Assembly: GCA_977020255.1 (NCBI GenBank)
Contig: CDROCS010000177.1
Location: forward strand, 62,001 to 126,000
Reading direction: 5' to 3'
Origin: Obrimoposthia wandeli
Taxonomy: Eukaryota
DNA: 64,000 nt
Shown: positions 13,565 through 64,000 of the stretch, piece by piece
How positions within the stretch are numbered: position 1 is the first letter of the stretch
Layout of the letters: each line of letters opens with the position of its first letter
The notes under the pieces: generated by a model
What the model saw: the letters and a program-made list of their open reading frames with translations, nothing else
What the model was told of the DNA's origin: nothing
The model's database searches: none
Position numbers and translations under genes: made by a program

Positions 13565-15535
13565 TGTTAGATTTAGGAATTGAAAAATTAAAATAATTAG
13601 TTGAATTTATACTAAAATAAAAATCCTTGAAAGCAAGGTTGAAAATTAAATAAAATATTAATTTTAAAATCGAGTTAAATTATTAGGACTAAATTAGGAA
13701 TAAAAATATTAAGAGGACCACGAAGGTCGTGTATGATGTGTTGTGTATATAAGTTAATTGGGAATTAAATAAAAGTGAAAAAAGACAAATAAGCAAATCT
13801 AATTAAGAAAAAGGAAAAGAAGATTGACAGAAGAAGAAATTCGCAACCGTCAGCAAAACGTAGGCATATTTAGTACAGTTGATTAATTGACTTATTTTCA
13901 AGAGCCAGGTGATATCCAGCTGAAGAAAGAAGTAGAATATATAAGCCCGATCCAGAAGAAATCGATTGCCAAAGTGATTGGCAACCAGAAGTAGGATATA
14001 TAAGCCAATTTACTTATTAATTCCCGCACAGAAAATCAGACCGTCTGATCTCGTCTATACAGTCTATTAGTCACAAAAACAAGGTGACGACTAAATCAGC
14101 AGCAGAAGGAAGCCTGAGCCAAACTGCTTCACTCTAAATCGCTCTCCCAGCAACATTAGCTGTCTTCACTCTAAATCGCTCTCCCAACAACAGTAGCTTG
14201 TCTTCCAACACAGAGGTGACTACTCAGCCAAACCGAGCCAACCGATCCCGAGAGACAATAGCGAGAATCAATTCTCTACTCAGTCAAATCAAGCCAGCAA
14301 TATTCGTCAGATTGTCAGCGACTCTCTCCAGCCTAAAGTATCCCCAGCAATATTCGTTTGATTGCCAGCGACTCTCTTCAGCCTAAATTAAAGGTATCAA
14401 AACTTGTGAAATTTTGATTAAGAAAACGTGAAATTTGAATTACTACATTTTAATATATTCTGATTTAAGAGAACGTGAAATTTGAATTACTACATTTTAA
14501 TACATTTTGATTTAAGAGAACGTGAAATTTGAATTACTACATTTTAATACATTTTGATTTAAGAAGAACGTGAAATTTGAATTACTACATTTTAATATAT
14601 TTTGATTTAAGAGAACGTGAAATTTGAATTACTACATTTTACTATATTCTGATTTAAGAGAACGTGAAATTTGAATTACTACATTTTAATACATTTTGAT
14701 TTAAGAGAACGTGAAATTTGAATTACTACATTTTAATACATTTTGATTTAAGAGAACGTGAAATTTGAATTACTACATTTTAATACATTTTGATTTAAGA
14801 GAACGTGAAATTTGAATTACTACATTTTAATACATTTTGATTTAAGAGAACGTGAAATTTGAATTACTACATTTTACTATATTCTGATTTAAGAGAACGT
14901 GAAATTTGAATTGCTACATTTTAATACATTTTGATTTAAGAGAATGTGAAATTTGAATTACTACATTTTAATACATTTTGATTTAAGAGAACGTGAAATT
15001 TGAATTACTACATTTAATACATTTTGATTTAAGAGAACGTGAAATTTGAATTACTACACTTTACTATATTTTGATTTAAGAGAACGTGAAATTCGAATTA
15101 TAAACTCGTGAAATTTAAGGAATTTATGGAAGTTTTGCCCTACAATATTTATCGACACAAGAGTTAGAGGAACAACTCTAAAATCTTGACTAACCTTAAC
15201 ATAAAATCGATACGTGGTTCATCCCCACTTGTAGAGACTTACAGAAGTCTTAGGAGTTTTTACCATACTTTTTAGAAAATACGTACATAAACGTATTGTT
15301 GTGTTTTAGTTTAGTGTGTTACCAATAAACGATTTCCTACATTAGAACACGTTATTTTAAAAACCCTTCAGATTTAGAGACGTCAAACCAAACACCTTCA
15401 GATAAGCAATAGAGATAGGCAACCATAACACTAAGTAGGCCACGACCAACTTTAAGACCTGCTTCTATTCGAACTCACGTTGGGGCCCTCCGCACACAAG
15501 AGGATCTATACAAGTCTCGTATAGAAACCCCAACA
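13565..15535. mobile_element. Solo-LTR-like insertion A (TGTTAG...CCCCAACA), 4-bp TSD GTTT, containing a 47-bp tandem array
   Basis: GTTT at 13561-13564 and 15536-15539. The minus-strand gag-like frame is continuous once the insert is removed. Confidence 0.7.
14415..15100. repeat. Tandem array, 47-bp unit TGATTTAAGAGAACGTGAAATTTGAATTACTACATTTTAATACATTT, about 14-15 copies
   Basis: Near-identical head-to-tail units with no unique spacers. Confidence 0.95.
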
Positions 15536-15583
15536 GTTTTGTTTTATCAGTACTTTTGGGTTGATAATATTTTGTAATAGTTG

Positions 15584-16414
15584 TGTTAGTTTTGTTCCAA
15601 ATAAATAAAATTTCAAATCAAATTGTTGAAGTATTGTATTGTTAAATCAAATGACAGCAAAGTATTTTTGAAATATCAGTAAAATTGTTCACTTGTAAAT
15701 AAATTGTAAAATTCTGGTAAATTGTGTCTTGTGAAGTCGTAGAGAATTATGCTGTTATATACATATATAACGGTAGGTAGCTCGGCAGTAGGGAGATATG
15801 GCCAAAGAGGAACAGATTATCGATTATCGTCCACACACACAACCGCCGCCTTTGTGCAGCAAAAGTACATGTAAATTGGACCGGGAAGAGATATGAGAGA
15901 AGGAGACGATAGCTGACAGCGGAAGACAGGTAGTGACCATGAGGAAGAGAATCGCCGGATGTGTGATTTGGCATTGGGAAGACGCACAGTTGCAGAGAAT
16001 TTCCCGTCTGCTACTGATGATCATGATGATGTTGTTTGTCACTGTTGCGTACACACACATGCACAGGGGAGAGTGCATTCAGACACAGGGAGACTGCTGG
16101 TCGAAGATAGAGATGATGTCGATGATGACGCTAGCTGACTGGGATGATGGAGAAGGATGATGCGAAAGGAAGTGGAGGAGGACCAAATACAATTGGGGGG
16201 TCCGGAGAGCTGGACGGAAAATTCAGTGAGATAAAAACATCTCCGCTCTGCCATTCACTTTTTCTGCCGCCTTCCTGATGAGCATGGCAAGGTGAAACGG
16301 GGTTTTTACCCTGTCGGAAGCTGATAAAAACTTACTCACTGATTGAGGGCATTTTAGTAAAATGTCAATTTAAATTGACATAAATTTATTTTTAATTAAT
16401 TTTAAATCCCAACA
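15584..16414 (+). mobile_element. Solo-LTR-like insertion B (TGTTAG...TCCCAACA), 4-bp TSD GTTG, carrying a degenerate hammerhead
   Basis: GTTG at 15580-15583 and 16415-16418. Removing the insert restores the minus-strand frame ...NTQ|LLQNIINPKVLIKQN. Confidence 0.65.
16271..16320 (+). ncRNA. Degenerate type I hammerhead ribozyme
   Basis: CTTC-CTGATGA-GCAT/GGCA/AGGT-GAA-ACGGGG/TTTTTA/CCCTGT-C-GGAAG. The core is intact, stem II is mismatched and stem I is one C short. Confidence 0.7.
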
Positions 16415-17144
16415 GTTGTGTGTTGTTTGTGTTTGTTTTTTTGTTGTTTATGAGTGTAGTGAGTTCTGCTATGAGTGTGTCTAAAATGATGATGTCGTTT
16501 TTATCTCTACTATTTCTTTTAGGATTTTGAAAGTATTTTTGCAAAATTTATGTTTTGGTAGGTTATAATTTTATTCCACGGTACTGTGTGTGAGGTTTAT
16601 CCATTGATTAGGTGTGTTGTTGTGGTCCGTGAAGTATGTTGGAATTGTGATGTGTTGATTGTTGTATGATTTTGTATTGCAGTTTGTATTTGTCCGTGTG
16701 TTTGAAAAAATGGATTGGTGTGTCGGTGTGTTGTTGTTTGATTTTTTTCTATTTGGCATGTTTGTTGAAGAATTGATATTTATGGATTTATATTTAGCCC
16801 TACGAGGCTTGTACGCAAAATAGAGTTTGCAACAACAAAAAGAGTTCGTAGGGAGATTAGTATATTTAGTATTAAAATTAATGTGTGTATGGTGGTGGTT
16901 TTTACAACTCACAAACGATCAAACTGATCTTGGCTTCTAGTTGTTTTTGATAAACTTCCAGAGAAGGCTTATGTTGGGAAAATATATTAAATAATTGTTT
17001 AAAAAAGAAAAATAAAAATATAAAATTTTTAAAAAATAAAAAGGAAAAAGGAAATTAATTAATTGAAAATTAATTGGGAACTTTCCTTAATTAGGGAAAA
17101 GTTCCGATTTTTAAAATTGTGCACTTTGGCATTTAGTATATTCA

Positions 17145-17196
17145 ATCTCCGACGGGAAAAAAGCCCGTTTCGCCCTGCCGGGCTCATCAGGGAGAT
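17145..17196 (-). ncRNA. Type I hammerhead ribozyme, apparently intact
   Basis: The minus strand reads ATCTCC-CTGATGA-GCCC/GGCA/GGGC-GAA-ACGGG/CTTTTTT/CCCGT-C-GGAGAT. All core nucleotides are present, the three stems pair perfectly, and the cleavage triplet is GUC (cut between 17151 and 17150). Confidence 0.93.
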
Positions 17197-18174
17197 GGTT
17201 TGTTATCTCTGACTTCGCGGTGGGTTCCGCGAAGCCAGAGATAACAATAATAAAGCCAGGGAAAAGATTCCCCCTTTCATGTGCCGACGAATATCGTCGA
17301 CATATGATGTTGTTGTGCACAAATGCACAATTCAACACACACACACTCACACAGCAGACATCACTTACTCACTCAACTTTCTTACTCACGCAATCGCTCA
17401 CACAATCCCTTGCTCACTCACTCTCCCTACTCACCTATTCTTTGTGCACATGTGTGTGTAAGTTTTAACTAAAATTTTTCCGCCTGCCCAGAGTTCGACA
17501 GGCGGTGGATTTTCCCGGCTGCACATGTGAGTGTGTGCAGAGCCGGGAAATATCGATACTTCTCCTCTCTGCCCAGATCAATTTTTCAACCGTTGCCTCT
17601 ATATGGCGCACTCTAACTATCTCCCTGAAATTCCTGAGGCGCTCCCTACATCCACCAAGCCATATCCCTGCCTTCTGATTTTCAAATATATAGGCACCAA
17701 ATACCAAAGTCACCGATCCACTTGGGCCAGTGATACAATTTGATTTTGGCTGCTGCCATCGATCAATGTTAGTCACTACATACCTACACAGTAAAATGCA
17801 GTGGCGTTTTGTGCAGTCGTGCGGACGAAGATTCTATTTAGTCTATGGTGCTGCAATTTGACATTTGGGCAGCAGAATAAATAGTTCTACAAAAATATTC
17901 ACACGACACAATTTTGTTATTAACTTGATTGCTTGAATTGTCAGCTAAAAATAGAAATCCAATACAATTTCTTGTTCAAATTATAGATTGATGTTAATCC
18001 TGAAAACCAATTCATTCTATCATATGGAAGCTTTATCTATTACAATTTTATTCATTTAGTTTATTATCTCTACCAAATAAAAAAGAAAGCGAACAAGTTA
18101 ACACAAAAAACAAAAAGCCAGTCGACAAAAAATTGTTACAAATCTGTCAAAACAAATTTTATTAAACACAAAAG

Positions 18175-18482
18175 ATTGAATCGAATTGGAACGATTATTA
18201 TCATAAAACAATTGAATTAAATTGGAACAATTATTGTTATAGAAATTGAATCGAATTGGAACGATTATTATCATAAAACAATTGAATTGAATTGGAACAA
18301 TTATTGTTACAGAAATTGAATCGAATTGGAACGATTATTATCATAAAACAATTGAATCGAATTGGAACAATTATTGTTACAGAGATTGAATCGAATTGGA
18401 ACAATTATTATCATAAAACAATTGAATTGAATTGGAACAATTATTGTTACAGAGATTGAATTGAATTGGAACAATTGTTATT
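18175..18482. repeat. Tandem array, 70-bp unit made of 36+34-bp related halves, about 4.4 copies
   Basis: Unit starts at 18175, 18245, 18315, 18385 and 18455. Confidence 0.92.
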
Positions 18483-18958
18483 TCTTACTAATTTATTGAA
18501 ATCTAAAATAAATATTATTCGTTTGCTCCGGTTTTATTAACACTTACATCTTGAATCCTGCCTGTGGCACTGTTCCTTCAGAAATGGAAGAAACTAGGAT
18601 TCAACTAAACATTACTTAGGTGTGTTCACGCTACAGTCTCAGACTAAGCTCGAGACAAAGTCGTATATTCACTTTTTAAATGCTCTGAAGAGAGAGATTT
18701 AGAGATCTTAAGGCAAAGAAGAACCCCGAAAAGCATTAATGGTGCAGCAGTTTTTATCACTCATTTACTGTGATATTTCATTTTTCAAGAATGTGTTTAT
18801 TTTTGTTGAAGTAATTTTTAAAATAAAACATAGTGTTCAGTTTTTTACTTTCCACCTGTTATAATTATTAATGTTTATGTACAATAAAGCGTATCAACAT
18901 TTTTTAATGCTTAAATTTTTTTTTATTGATTATCTTTTTTATCAAATTTAAATCTGAA

Positions 18959-23989: not shown

Positions 23990-24770
23990 TGTTGGGGGTT
24001 AGATTCATTTAATGAAATTAATTTATATCAAAAAAAATGTAGTTGGTTACGTTTATCATTAGCATTCTCTTTTACACTTTAAAAAATATTATATAAGAAA
24101 CATATTTTAAAAACAAAATGGTTAGAAATCTAAAAAATGCCCTATTAATTGAAAAATTAATTCGTGAATCTTCACTAATTAATTGTTTAGAAATTAATTG
24201 CACTTATGCATTTTAGTTTGTCAATCCCCGACGCTCTTCAGGGCGATGGCTAGTGTTTATCTCTAACTTCGCTGTTGACGAACACCTGTGAAGCCAGAGA
24301 TAAAAAATTAGGTTCTAATGTGCAAAAAACATACAGCCATGCACACACATACACATTTTCCAACCCTAATTCACTCACTTACTCACTACTAACTACTCAC
24401 TAATCATTCACACAACTGCTTACACACTAACTCATTGTATGTGTATGTGAAAACGCAAGACATATTTCAATGCCAAGTTTCCTTCTGTTCTCTTCCCAGT
24501 CCATCTCATACACTCTCCTCTCTATATCTCCCCGTATCCCGTGATTTTCCGACCGTCCCTTATAAATATCTTCCTTCTGTTGTGGAATCTGGGAATCGCA
24601 AGCTCGAGCTGGACAGAGGCGAATTGTCGGAAGAATCGAGCAGTAGTAGAAGCGAAGGCCGGACCATCATTTTATGTGTTTGTGTGTGGATGTACCTCTG
24701 TGCAATCTGTACCTCTATATTGAATCTATCAAATATAAAAAACGCAACATAGTGTCTACAACAAGCACAA
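23990..24770 (-). mobile_element. Third copy of the hammerhead-bearing LTR-like family; ribozyme internally deleted (24224-24247)
   Basis: Starts TGTTGGGG at 23990. The minus strand reads ATCGCC-CTGAAGA-GC-GTC-GGGGAT (stems II and III lost). The flanking TTATCTCT..CTTCGC..GAAGCCAGAGATAA hairpin and CA/ACTC-rich tracts are shared with insert C. The right boundary is approximate. Confidence 0.6.
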
Positions 24771-59687: not shown

Positions 59688-62600
59688 ATGCCTATGGTAA
59701 GAATATATATTTATTATTTCCTTATTAATATTTATTATTTCAGATTACGTGTAACCTATTCCCTGCGTATTGTGGTGCTTCGGCACCTCATGGAGGAGAG
59801 ACCTGCATGGAGACAATGTCTGCATACTATCGGACAAAGTCTCGCGGGCTTCACTTCTTCGTCTGCCCCTTCTGCAGAACAATGGAGGAGAAGGAGTTTC
59901 GAGACTTCTTCAGTGAACATCGAGCTCACCTATCGTGTTTCACGGCCAACAATAAGAAGAGGGATATCGTCCAATTGGTGCGCAATTCGCAGGTCGCTCC
60001 AGCTCCATCTCCAATTCCAGTTGCAGTCGATCAACCCTTTTACGGTCCTGTCATTGGTCCTTCTCTCCCGGCTCCTGATTCTTCTGCTGCCCCATACACT
60101 CAAATGTCTAACAATGAGTGGATGAACGACATCTCCGAAGAAGATTTTGAGGAGTTGGCACCAGCAACCCAATTCTCAAACAATGACTGGATGCGAAATA
60201 TCACCCAGTCAGATTTCGAGATGGAGCAGCCTCAATGGAGCGACAACACCTGGTTGGAGACAATCGAGGAATTTGATTTCGTCGAGATGTCGGACGACAG
60301 CTGGATGGATTCCATCAATGAAGAGGACTTCATTCCAGCTCAACTTGATTTGCCTTCATTAGGTATTTTTTATTATTATTTTTAAATTATATTTTTTTTA
60401 TTATATTTTTTTATTTTTTATTCAGGAAATACCCTGATACAGCCGTCATCAGATAGGACAGCTATGCCTCCCCCATCTCGAGTGCCTACATCGATGTTAG
60501 CACGCCTTAGAGGTAATAATTTTTAAAAATATATTTATTTTTTAATATATTTATTTCAGCAGCACTAACCTCTACAACAGCCGCTTCTTCATTGACAAGG
60601 TCAGCTTCAAATGCAGCCTATACAACTGCCGCTTCTTCATCGGCAAGGTCAGCTTCAAATGCAGCCTCTACAACTGCAACTGTCTCATCAACATCGGCAG
60701 CACCTGCTATAGTAGCCCCTTCAACATCAGCTACGATTGCCTCAACATCGGTAGCATCAACAATAGCAGCACCTTCCACATCAGCTGCAATTGCCTCAAC
60801 ATCAGCAGCATCACCAATAGCAGCACCTTCAACCTCAGCTGCGATTGTCTCAACTATTAATATAAATAATTGTCTTCCCGTTCAATTAGGGGAAGGTTTG
60901 TCAGCGACAAACGGAAGAAAGAGACGAGGCCAATTTCTTAATAAGGTCCCACCAAAAAAACGTAGAGAAAACGGTGCTACTATAGAGTATCACCTAAATA
61001 ATAAATATGTTATAGTTAAGGTGCCATTAGGAAATGAAATTTTATTAAACGTAGGTGTAGATTCAAATATTGAAAATCTTTTAAAATCAGAAGTGACTAA
61101 ATTAGGACAGGCTAAGGTTCAATTTTGCGTAACAGTGTAGTTTAAAAATGTCAATGAGGAAACTAAAACTTGGGTAATTTCCCATAAAGCAACTATTTTA
61201 TATGATAATTTTGTAACTGAAATTGGAAGAAACCTGGATGAAAAAATTGCTAATTATAGCGAGTTAAGTAGTGGATGGACTCTAGTTAGAATTCACGATG
61301 TTAGCTTTGTTCTAACAAAGTTCACTGACATGATATATCTTTCGGGGAGTTCATACATTCCTTCACCTAGATCTCTTCAACTTTCACGTCCCATTGTTAA
61401 CGTACAAAACAGTGATAACCTTTGCTTTCTGTATAGCGTGTTGGCCATCCTCAAAAGGGGTGTAATTACTGAGCATAGAGAGCGTGTCAGTAAATATACC
61501 CCTTTTTTAAATGAATTGCAGTATCATGGAATAGATTTTCCTGTTAAATTAACTGCGATATCAAGATTTGAACACATTTATAACTTGAGTATTAATGTAT
61601 TCAAATATAATACTGATATCCCTATTAATGTAACAGACGAAGAAATTTTTATAAATCCTTTTGTAGATGTAATTTATAGGAGAAAAAATGAAGGGACTCC
61701 AGTCAACTTAATTTTGCTTGAATATAATAAAATATTCCATTATGCTGCAATTCCCAATATATATTGTCTTCTAAATTTAGATAATGGAGCCTTACCGGTT
61801 AGGATAAGGTGTAAGTGGTGTCATAGATGTTTACATGGATTCCGATCCAAGCTCTCTTACAACAGACATCTGACATTATGTACACTGAATCCTGATGACA
61901 ATACGCTATATAGCATGCCTAAGGATTTAAAATTCAGGGATTGGACAAAATGCATACCCGTGGAATTCAGGGTGTATGCTGATTTTGAGTCAATTCTAGC
62001 ATTGCACGACCAGTATGAGAGTATTCACCTACCGGCTTCGGCAGGACTACAATTCTTAGGCCCCAATATTACACAGTATCATAAAATTTCCGGTCCAAAT
62101 TGTATTTTAGAATTTATGTTAAAATTAGAAGAATTAGGAACTACAATTGTCAAACCGTGGTATAATCTTAATGCTCATCAATCAATGATCATGACAGGCA
62201 TAGACTGGGTTAATTTTAATTCTTGTAGATTATGTTATTTGTGTGGTACCCAGCCTAAGTTAGTCAGAGATCACGATCATGTTACGGGGCGATACTTGGG
62301 AGCGGCGTGCAACCTTTGTAACCTTGGCCGTCGTCTACCTAAAAAACCACGCATTCCCATCGTGTTTCATAACCTCAAAGGATATGATTTGCATCATATA
62401 CTTAAATACGCGTTGGGTACATTAAGCTCTTGGGAAATTTCATGTATACCTCAAACTTCAGAGAAATATTTATCTTTAACTGCATATACTGAATTCTGCA
62501 GTTAAAGATTCATAGATTCTCTGCAGTTTTTGAGCGGGTCTTTAAAACATTTAACGGCATCTTTAAATGCATGGCCAATTACACAGTCAGTGTTCCCAGC

Positions 62601-64000
62601 TTCGGTTAACGATAAAGGGACTTTTCCGTATAAATTTGCAAAAAACCTTTGCAGATTTAGAAAATACAACTGAAATCCCACCCATAACTGAATTTGAAAG
62701 TGTAAGTCTTCAAGACTATAATGAGGCCCGTACATTTTGGGTGAATAATTGTCGAAATCTTTTAGAATATATGCTTTATTATATGAAGTTAGACATTTAT
62801 CTTTTAGCTGATATTTTTGAGTCCTTTCGTGTAAAATCCTTAGTAGAAGATGGGCTAGAACCCATGCATTTCTTTAGTTTACCTGGTCTTTCATGGGCAA
62901 CAGCAATAAAAACTCTTAAAATTAATATCGAGTTACTGCAAGATCCCGCGATGTATCAAATGTATGATTATGGTATACGCGGTGGAATGACTTTTGTCAA
63001 CAAACATCATGTTGTCAAAAATCAATCCACGGAGATTCTGTACATCGATATTAATAATTTGTATGGGTGGGCGCTTACTCAACCTCTACCTCATGCCAAC
63101 TTTAAGTGGGTTTATGATGTGGATCAGTTGAATAAGTTGATGACAGATTTGGCTACTGTTGATACAGTTTCATCCGACGTCGGCTATTTGGTTGAGGTGG
63201 ACATAAAAATCCCTCCCAATGTGCATGATAAATTAGATGATCGTCCAGTAGTGCCTGTTCATCAATGCCCACCTAATTCAAAGGTTAAGAAATTATTGTT
63301 AACCCATGAAGACAAGTTGAATTATGTTGTGCATTGGCGGCTTCTTCAATTCTACTTAAAGTTGGGAGCGAAAGTTACTCGAATTCATCGTGCTATAAGC
63401 TTCAGTCAAAACTTTGTGTTTAAAGACTATATTGAGAAGAATTCTAGAAAACGTAATTTGGCCACTAGCAAATTCGATCGAGATTTTTACAAGTTAAAAA
63501 GTAATAGTCTCTTTGGAAAAACTGTAGAGGACTTGCGGAAACGTATTTGTCTACGGTTTTGCAATGATGAGCGTAAACTAATAACATATACTAGCAAGTA
63601 CAACTTCAAGCGTAGTTTTACAATTGCAGATGACTTGGTAGCAGGGTTATTAGGAAAACAGAGTATTTGACTCGATCGACCGAGTTATATAGGTCAAACG
63701 GTTTTAGACATTTCTAAACTCAGAATGTATGAGCTTCAATACATAGAATTGGAGAAATACCGACAAGAATTTAATTGTGAGATTAAAATCGCAGCTGGGG
63801 ACACTGACTCTTTCTTTTTAGAATGTAGGAATGTTAGTTTAAATAATTAATTATTACCAGCAATGTTTAGGGACAACTTACTAGATACCCATAAATATCC
63901 CGCTAACCATCCTCTACACTCTATGAGTTTAAAGGACATTATCGGGAAATTTAAGGATGAAAGCGAGGGACAGGTTTCGTATGATGATTGTATTTTCCTA
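59688..64000 (+). pseudogene. polB: Protein-primed family B DNA polymerase (pPolB), predicted spliced: 59688-59696, 59744-60362, 60426-60512, 60560 to beyond 64000. Inactivated by TAG 61138, TAA 62503, +1 frameshift in the A-run 62640-62645, TGA 63668 and TAA 63848
   Basis: Motifs SSGW..SGSSYIP, NSDNLCFLYS, YADFES (ExoI), CYLC..RDHDHVTGRYLGAACNLCN (endonuclease VII-like), VFHNLKGYDLH (ExoII), RFIDSLQF, YIDINNLYGWAL (motif A), KLKSNSLFGKT (motif B), GDTDS (motif C) and IGKFKDE. Confidence 0.92.

What the first reader, a model, noticed from the sequence alone, without database searches (positions are those of the whole stretch)
17145..17196. Intact type I hammerhead ribozyme inside a TG..CA, 4-bp-TSD LTR-like unit
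Seen: a complete core (CUGAUGA, GAA, GUC) with perfectly paired stems I (6 bp), II (4 bp) and III (5 bp) on the minus strand, ~170 nt from a TGTTGGGA terminus of a 1.57-kb insert with a CTTA TSD. Known: animal type I hammerheads typically occur in Penelope-like pseudo-LTRs and tandem non-LTR retrozymes, while LTR-borne hammerheads are known from plant retrozymes (type III). Inference: a type I ribozyme in a gypsy-style LTR of an animal would be an unusual combination.
Basis: partly seen in the sequence, partly recalled or inferred. Interest (0 to 1): 0.85.

Follow-up and report, generated by a model that had tools for sequence, protein, structure and literature searches.

The report
Backwards hammerhead ribozyme in gypsy LTR
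A complete self-cutting RNA motif (hammerhead ribozyme) is built into the terminal repeat of an abundant virus-like jumping gene of this animal, on the strand opposite the element's genes. It has been kept intact while the DNA around it drifted, an arrangement I did not find described in the literature.

Summary
Window 17145-17196 (minus strand) is a complete type I hammerhead: Rfam RF00163 scores 32.4 bits against a cut-off of 34, and relatives in the genome reach 38.5. It lies 173 nt inside a 1,571-bp solo LTR (16972-18542, TG..CA ends, CTTA target-site duplication).

The LTR belongs to a very abundant ~15-kb Ty3/gypsy-order element. Full copies have 98.4-99.4% identical LTR pairs, a tRNA-type primer-binding site, and protease, RT/RNase H and integrase. 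They also carry a Monjiviricetes-type fusion glycoprotein and a DEDDh exonuclease. It is not a Penelope-like element or a tandem retrozyme.

This holds in at least three LTR lineages.

The ribozyme is under selection:
- Among 22 LTR copies chosen without regard to it, 0 of 52 ribozyme positions are substituted, against 124 of 507 nearby.
- Across diverged LTR families all three stems covary and the catalytic core is invariant.
- Old dead copies have lost it.

Most likely it cuts RNAs transcribed against the element. The benefit is inferred, and no RNA data could be obtained. Other windows of this scan reported the same module in this genome, and my tests agree with them.

The parts
17145..17196 (-). 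Type I hammerhead ribozyme with an intact core; the predicted cut is between 17151 and 17150.
   Evidence: RF00163 32.4 bits. Own model R1 83.2 bits. The MFE fold is the three-way junction. No substitution in 22 family copies.
17200..17247 (-). 21-bp hairpin directly 5' of the ribozyme on the ribozyme strand (TTATCTCTGG..GUCAGAGAUAA). It is conserved across the group A LTR families.
   Evidence: Inverted repeat I3. Fold of 131 nt gives -56.4 kcal/mol, z -7.2. Conserved arms with a recurrent G.U on the ribozyme strand.
16972..18542 (+). Solo LTR (1,571 bp, TG..CA) of a ~15-kb Ty3/gypsy-order element. The + strand is the element's sense strand.
   Evidence: Homology to the LTR pairs of full elements whose genes lie on the same strand.
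16968..16971 (.). Left copy of the CTTA target-site duplication.
   Evidence: Read directly from the sequence.
18543..18546 (.). Right copy of the CTTA target-site duplication.
   Evidence: Read directly from the sequence.
18175..18481 (+). 70-bp tandem repeat (4.4 copies) in the variable 3' part of the LTR.
   Evidence: Tandem Repeats Finder; the repeat finder family D2.
17120..17144 (+). Conserved sense-strand block (TGCACTTTGGCA plus an A/T-rich TATA-like box) just upstream of the ribozyme complement. It may be the core promoter; this is untested.
   Evidence: Alignment of LTR 5' parts across families.
16264..16326 (+). Second, partly decayed hammerhead with core letters intact and mispairs in stems I and II. 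It lies in an older LTR of a sister family in the opposite orientation (about 15540-16416, minus strand).
   Evidence: R1 59.1 bits. Inverted repeat I1. 74% match to the exonuclease-adjacent 3' LTR of C3563.
24219..24305 (-). Third LTR remnant: the hairpin is kept but hammerhead stems II and III are deleted, so the ribozyme is dead.
   Evidence: R1 25.3 bits with a gap over model positions 19-50; sequence.

Best explanation
The motif is a working-type type I hammerhead that the active lineages of an env-carrying Ty3/gypsy-order LTR retroelement keep in their LTR, about 70-225 nt from its 5' end. It sits on the strand opposite the element's genes. Any RNA transcribed against the element through an LTR would fold the hairpin-plus-hammerhead module and cut itself after C17, between window positions 17151 and 17150. 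Such RNA could come from read-in from flanking DNA, from an antisense start inside the LTR or the body, or from a small-RNA cluster transcript. The cut leaves a 2',3'-cyclic phosphate upstream and an uncapped 5'-OH RNA downstream. In a full element both LTRs cut, so antisense RNA is severed from its capped leader on entry and trimmed on exit. The window's copy is a solo LTR left by LTR-LTR recombination and carries the module passively. Shown here: the motif, its place and strand in a true LTR, and purifying selection with covariation. Inferred: that cleavage occurs in vivo, and that its benefit is to limit or shape full-length antisense RNA, for example to give less double-stranded RNA or small-RNA precursor against the element.
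For: Motif and fold. True LTR of an autonomous element: same-orientation LTR pairs about 13 kb apart, at 98.4-99.4% identity. TSD AACC and a primer-binding site TGGTGAGCCCGACG 2 nt after the 5' LTR. Glycoprotein + protease, RT/RNase H, integrase and exonuclease all on one strand. Antisense placement: the LTR aligns plus/plus with elements whose genes are on plus, while the ribozyme is on minus. The same holds for the exonuclease-adjacent 3' LTRs of two other lineages, C3563 and L044. Selection within the family, on copies not chosen for the ribozyme: 0/52 columns substituted against 124/507 in the rest (Fisher p 1.7e-6), and 0 against 90 for variants shared between copies. Between families, BLAST similarity to other LTR families is confined to LTR positions ~148-298, the ribozyme plus hairpin. 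91.9% of cells are paired, 9 of 16 pairs change on both sides, and slid controls give 31-46%. The invariant columns are exactly the catalytic core, while position 7 varies and position 17 is C or U, as the hammerhead consensus allows. Dead old copies carry core mutations or deletions. That fits selection on transposing lineages rather than on individual insertions.
Against: Cleavage is untested. This copy scores 1.6 bits under Rfam's gathering score. The between-family set was picked by a hammerhead model, which inflates apparent conservation. The G.U (20) against A.C (12) asymmetry in the stems is too weak to prove which strand is selected. No antisense promoter was identified. The proposed benefit (less antisense or double-stranded RNA) rests on reasoning alone.
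Confidence: 0.55

Rival explanations
1. Retrozyme-like cycle on the antisense strand. The two LTR ribozymes excise a unit-length antisense RNA (one LTR plus the body), which a host ligase circularises and which serves as a template or regulator. LTR-only tandem arrays would then give small circles.
For: There is one ribozyme in each LTR in the same orientation. An LTR-body-LTR-body-LTR array exists on C243. Hammerhead ends (5'-OH and cyclic phosphate) are the substrates for circularisation in plant and animal retrozymes (PMC7761336). If the sense start lies at the cut site, as the TATA-like box ~17-20 nt upstream hints, the excised RNA would be exactly unit length.
Against: The excised RNA would be about 13 kb, far longer than known ribozyme circles (170-1000 nt). 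It is antisense, so the primer-binding site and polypurine tract are in the wrong sense for reverse transcription. No junction reads could be examined.
Confidence: 0.15
2. The conserved block serves the sense strand, as core promoter and start site or as a structured 5' leader (TAR-like hairpin plus three-way junction). Its hammerhead character is then a relic with no catalytic role today.
For: A conserved TGCACTTTGG-A/T-rich box lies just upstream in the sense direction. The conserved UGA after stem I reads TCA(A/G)TC, initiator-like, on the sense strand. AATAAA followed by a GT-rich stretch comes after the hairpin in this family. Helices fold on either strand.
Against: The pattern of invariant and free positions matches the catalytic requirements of a hammerhead position by position. 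A promoter or leader would not be expected to impose that pattern. G.U pairs in the stems and hairpin favour the ribozyme strand. The AATAAA is not conserved in other families.
Confidence: 0.15
3. Passive relic: a Penelope-like or retrozyme hammerhead was captured once by an ancestral LTR and is simply carried along.
For: Type I hammerheads are otherwise typical of Penelope-like elements and non-LTR retrozymes. Capture is a plausible origin.
Against: Zero substitutions against 24% variable columns in the flanks. Compensatory changes occur in all three stems across families whose LTRs are otherwise unalignable. A neutral passenger would have decayed as it has in dead copies. Stem III is a 5-bp closed helix, unlike the minimal dimeric Penelope-type motifs.
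Confidence: 0.1

Closest known systems
Plant LTR retrozymes (Cervera, Urbina and de la Pena 2016, PMC4918200)
   Same: A hammerhead inside each LTR of an LTR-type retroelement. TG..CA ends, 4-bp target-site duplications and gypsy-type primer-binding site logic are shared.
   Different: Retrozymes are small, non-coding and non-autonomous, and carry type III hammerheads on the sense strand, which excise a 600-1000-nt circular RNA. Here the element is about 15 kb and autonomous, from an animal. The ribozyme is type I and antisense to the primer-binding site, polypurine tract and genes.
Penelope-like element pseudo-LTR hammerheads and metazoan non-LTR retrozymes (PMC4209133, PMC7229834, bioRxiv 10.64898/2026.07.22.740005)
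   Same: Type I topology, an animal host and a retroelement terminal repeat.
   Different: Those elements encode RT plus a GIY-YIG endonuclease, or nothing, and occur as tandem or partial-tandem units. They often have minimal stem III motifs that act as dimers, on the sense strand. Here there are protease, RT, RNase H and integrase, true LTRs with TSDs, a 5-bp closed stem III, and antisense placement.
Envelope-carrying Ty3/gypsy elements of metazoans (errantivirus-like; eLife 2026, PMC13524379) and chuvirus-type glycoprotein captures (Dezordi et al. 2020, as cited there)
   Same: The host element has gypsy-order pol plus a captured viral class III-type fusion glycoprotein.
   Different: That paper does not mention ribozymes, exonucleases or antisense features. 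Here the glycoprotein lies upstream of the protease in the same reading frame, and an extra DEDDh exonuclease ORF precedes the 3' LTR.
HDV-like and other ribozymes of non-LTR retrotransposons (R2, RTE, L1Tc). This comparison is from my own knowledge and was not checked here.
   Same: A self-cleaving ribozyme is kept by a retrotransposon lineage as part of its own sequence.
   Different: Those act on the sense transcript to define its 5' end. This one cannot, because it is on the opposite strand.

Membership tests
Hammerhead ribozyme, type I (Rfam RF00163) | Catalytic core C3 U4 G5 A6 N7 G8 A9 ... G12 A13 A14, A15.1-U16.1, H17. | tested here: met
   All positions are canonical in 17145-17196 (-). 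They are invariant in 21 diverged relatives, with N7 free and position 17 C or U.
Hammerhead ribozyme, type I (Rfam RF00163) | Three helices around the core, with helix I open and II and III closed by loops. | tested here: met
   The MFE and centroid folds give exactly this. Pairs are supported by covariation.
Hammerhead ribozyme, type I (Rfam RF00163) | Score at or above Rfam's gathering cut-off (34 bits). | tested here: not met
   This copy scores 32.4 bits, mainly because of its long stem III loop. Six homologous copies elsewhere in the genome reach 35.8-38.5 bits.
Hammerhead ribozyme, type I (Rfam RF00163) | Mg2+-dependent self-cleavage. | not testable with these tools
   Needs in vitro transcription. 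No RNA reads could be laid.
Ty3/gypsy (Metaviridae-type) LTR retroelement | Direct LTRs with TG..CA ends and short target-site duplications. | tested here: met
   LTR pairs at 98.4-99.4% identity; TSD AACC on C685 and CTTA in the window.
Ty3/gypsy (Metaviridae-type) LTR retroelement | Domain order protease, RT, RNase H, integrase; primer-binding site after the 5' LTR. | tested here: met
   Pfam hits in that order on one strand. TGGTGAGCCCGACG lies 2 nt after the 5' LTR.
LTR retrozyme | Non-autonomous and non-coding, with the ribozyme on the same strand as the primer-binding site and polypurine tract. | tested here: not met
   The element encodes a full pol set. The ribozyme is on the opposite strand.
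LTR retrozyme | Type III hammerhead. | tested here: not met
   The open helix is I, so the topology is type I.
Penelope-like element / non-LTR retrozyme | RT with a GIY-YIG endonuclease, or short tandem ribozyme-bearing units. | tested here: not met
   Integrase-type element with no GIY-YIG hit. The ribozyme lies at a fixed distance from a TGTTGG LTR terminus, not in short tandem units.

The most novel reading that the evidence does not exclude
An autonomous, envelope-carrying animal retroelement uses a ribozyme against its own antisense transcripts. The LTR hammerheads would act as a firewall that decapitates read-in or cluster-derived antisense RNA at the element's borders, blunting double-stranded-RNA or small-RNA silencing. 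Alternatively, they would excise a unit-length antisense RNA. Either would be a role for self-cleaving ribozymes in the transposon-host conflict that I did not find described.
Probability: 0.25. Interest if true: 0.85.

Novelty: new variant of a known kind. Interest (0 to 1): 0.7.

Why it matters
Genomic hammerheads in animals are currently explained as parts of Penelope-like elements and their non-autonomous retrozymes. LTR-borne hammerheads are known only from small non-coding plant retrozymes. Here a type I hammerhead is a selected, integral part of the LTR of a large autonomous gypsy-type element with a viral fusion glycoprotein. It points the wrong way for processing the element's own RNA. 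This widens the set of retroelements that keep ribozymes. It also poses a concrete, testable question: what does a transposon gain by cutting RNA made against it? The element has thousands of young copies, so the RNA species should be easy to look for once strand-specific data exist.

Tried and rejected
- RNA evidence: the look-up of sequencing runs found only four runs of one study, none on record as RNA and all kept as contigs.
Orientation outside the main family therefore rests on two exonuclease-adjacent 3' LTRs plus homology.
- Cross-species breadth:
  - The exonuclease protein had no hits in the word-indexed search.
  - The exhaustive search gave two likely retroelement relatives on short Logan contigs.
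  - One of these shows a polypurine tract followed by TGTTGGAG, but the contig ends 91 nt into the LTR. Neither contig reaches the ribozyme site.
- Pattern scans of the metagenome and viral collections returned only unrelated microbial or phage hammerheads.
- Strand test by G.U against A.C counts was inconclusive, 20 against 12.
- Nested cases with a pol fragment on the same strand as the ribozyme (L034, L048, L049) were judged uninformative. The fragments start mid-gene, and insertions into other copies are common.
- AATAAA after the hairpin as a general R-region marker: it is not conserved across families.
- No ORF of note lies in the LTR on either strand.

Full report
**1. The observation**

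The reverse complement of window 17145-17196 reads AUCUCC / CUGAUGA / GCCC-GGCA-GGGC / GAAA / CGGG-loop-CCCG / UC / GGAGAU. Every catalytic-core position of a hammerhead is canonical. Stem I has 6 bp, stem II 4 bp, and stem III 5 bp counting A15.1-U16.1. Helix I is the open one, so the topology is type I.

Rfam's Hammerhead_1 model matches end to end at 32.4 bits, E 2.6e-5 over 4.5 kb. This is 1.6 bits below the gathering score, which is why the default scan of the window was empty. The shortfall is mostly the 7-nt loop on stem III. The minimum-free-energy and centroid folds of the minus strand are the canonical three-way junction. They are preceded by a 21-bp hairpin at 17200-17247. The 131-nt module folds at -56.4 kcal/mol, z = -7.2.

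**2. The surrounding unit**

The insert runs from 16972 (TGTTGGGA...) to 18542 (...TTAACA), 1,571 bp. CTTA stands at 16968-16971 and again at 18543-18546. Its 3' part holds a 70-bp tandem repeat.

The window's own genome is 1.35 Gb. A DNA search of it gave more than 3,200 candidate copies. Many lie in same-orientation pairs about 13 kb apart, and one contig carries three in a row.

I cut out four such pairs. Their terminal repeats are 1.2-1.54 kb long and 98.4-99.4% identical within a pair. On contig C685:
- The element is flanked by the duplication AACC.
- Its flanks match an uninterrupted copy of another repeat at window 62024-63352, which gives an empty site.
- The 5' repeat is followed, 2 nt later, by TGGTGAGCCCGACG, a tRNA-type primer-binding site.

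Between the repeats of C4073, all on one strand, lie the following:
- a 1,328-aa ORF joining an unassigned N-terminal part, a Monjiviricetes-type fusion glycoprotein (PF24664, 9e-92) and an aspartyl protease;
- RT with RNase H;
- integrase;
- a separate RNase_T/DEDDh exonuclease ORF that ends 160 nt before the 3' repeat.

This is therefore a true LTR of an autonomous Ty3/gypsy-order element of about 15 kb. The window holds a solo LTR of it.

**3. Strand**

The window's LTR aligns plus/plus with the LTRs of elements whose genes and primer-binding site are on the plus strand. The ribozyme is on the minus strand in every copy. It is therefore antisense to the element, 173-225 nt from the 5' end of the LTR.

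The same layout holds in two other lineages:
- On C3563 an exonuclease ORF only 36% identical is followed by ...AGGAT|TGTTGGGA. A decayed minus-strand hammerhead lies 70-130 nt into that LTR.
- In L044 an exonuclease 82% identical is followed by an LTR of another subfamily with a minus-strand hammerhead.

The window's second hammerhead, at 16264-16326 on the plus strand (59 bits with my model), lies in an older, oppositely oriented LTR at about 15540-16416. That LTR is 74% identical to the C3563 LTR. A third remnant at 24219-24305 keeps the hairpin but has lost stems II and III.

**4. Part of the LTR or a lodger?**

Searching the genome with RF00163 gave 24 scored hits, six of them above the gathering score. 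Nearly all lie 85-170 nt upstream of a ...TCCCAACA terminus, which is the reverse complement of TGTTGGGA. BLAST similarity of those LTRs to the window's LTR is confined to positions ~148-298, the ribozyme plus hairpin. The module is thus a conservation island at a fixed place in LTRs that have otherwise diverged beyond alignment. No Penelope-type genes or short tandem ribozyme units are involved.

**5. Selection**

Two lines of evidence bear on this.

Within the family: I took 22 distinct LTR copies picked by overall similarity, blind to the ribozyme. None of the 52 ribozyme columns carries a substitution. In the rest of the first 607 nt, 124 of 507 columns do (Fisher p = 1.7e-6). For variants shared between copies the count is 0 against 90. 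The only changes in the ribozyme are A-run length in the stem III loop (two copies) and one 5-nt deletion.

Between families: 21 diverged hammerheads were aligned.
- 91.9% of cells form standard pairs.
- 9 of 16 pairs change on both sides (35 cells).
- Slid controls give 31-46%.
- The invariant columns are CUGA-GA, G10.1, GAAA and U16.1. Position 7 varies and position 17 is C or U, as catalysis allows.

This between-family set was chosen by a hammerhead model, so it overstates conservation. The within-family test does not have that bias. Old, dead copies show C3-to-U, U4-to-C or internal deletions. Selection therefore acts on transposing lineages, not on individual insertions for the host's benefit.

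**6. Which strand is selected?**

Helices survive complementation, so I counted G.U pairs (allowed only on the ribozyme strand) against A.C pairs. The result was 20 against 12, suggestive only. The hairpin carries a recurrent G.U on the ribozyme strand in several lineages. It is equally or more stable on that strand. The strongest argument is the position-by-position match of invariance to the catalytic core.

**7. Mechanism**

Shown here: a catalytically complete motif, antisense, at the same place in both LTRs of young elements, under purifying selection.

Inferred: RNAs made against the element self-cleave at each LTR. The upstream piece keeps the hairpin and ribozyme core with a cyclic-phosphate end. 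The downstream piece is uncapped with a 5'-OH. In the 3' LTR this would decapitate antisense RNA entering the element. In the 5' LTR it would trim antisense RNA leaving it. I rate a real antisense-cleaving function at about 0.55. The specific benefit, less double-stranded RNA or small-RNA precursor, is a hypothesis.

The rivals are:
- an antisense retrozyme-like unit-length or circular RNA;
- a sense-strand promoter or leader role;
- a neutral relic, which is disfavoured by section 5.

An earlier first-reader note in this scan suggested that the cut site coincides with the U3/R border. I found a conserved TGCACTTTGG plus TATA-like box ending ~17-20 nt before the ribozyme complement. In this family an AATAAA with a GT-rich stretch follows the hairpin. 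However, the AATAAA is not conserved in other families, and without RNA data the start site is unknown.

**8. What is known**

The held literature assigns animal type I hammerheads to Penelope-like elements, Terminons and non-LTR retrozymes. It assigns LTR-borne hammerheads to plant type III retrozymes. A 2026 survey of envelope-carrying gypsy elements across metazoans mentions no ribozyme, exonuclease or antisense feature. I found no report of a type I hammerhead in the LTR of an autonomous animal LTR element. Absence from that library is not proof of absence.

Other windows of this scan reported the same antisense LTR hammerhead in this genome. My tests agree with them and add the ribozyme-blind within-family test. 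They also disagree with one earlier follow-up, which doubted that the repeats are LTRs.

**9. Limits**

- No RNA data could be used.
- Cross-species checks were inconclusive because the only related contigs stop short of the ribozyme site.
- Public metagenome and viral scans gave only unrelated hammerheads.

Noticed in passing
L023:3935-7918 and L028:3390-4337 (contig C4073 of the same genome): In the full element a Monjiviricetes-type fusion glycoprotein (PF24664, 9e-92) sits in the same 1,328-aa reading frame as the protease, upstream of it. A separate RNase_T/DEDDh exonuclease ORF lies just before the 3' LTR. The exonuclease ORF has more than 5,000 candidate copies, and the top 126 are all at least 90% identical.
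   Followed up: partly
window 61330-63670 (+): Two ORFs hit Endonuclease VII (PF02945) and protein-primed-type DNA polymerase B (PF03175), a Polinton/Maverick-like piece. The same repeat is the insertion target of the LTR element on contig C685.
   Followed up: partly
window 24219-24305 (-): A third LTR remnant of the same superfamily. The hairpin is intact but the hammerhead has a clean internal deletion of stems II and III.
   Followed up: yes
window 15161-15535: Another repeat ends in ..AAACCCCAACA with no hammerhead. It is found next to several hammerhead-LTR loci (L036, L040, L050, L052, L054). Its relation to them is unknown.
   Followed up: no
window 14329-15109: A 47-bp tandem array of about 16 units lies just upstream of the LTR cluster.
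   Followed up: no
group B LTRs, e.g. L038:1400-1500 (-), and window 16320-16350: In the sister LTR group, the 3' strand of stem I (GGAGGU) is followed by a loop and a second ACCUCC-CUGAU. This could form an alternative hairpin with the cleavage product, possibly a product-release or switch structure.
   Followed up: no
L057:2010-2116 (Logan contig of another organism): An exonuclease ORF 31% identical is followed by a polypurine tract and TGTTGGAG, apparently the start of a related LTR in another species. The contig ends 91 nt later, before the expected ribozyme site.
   Followed up: partly
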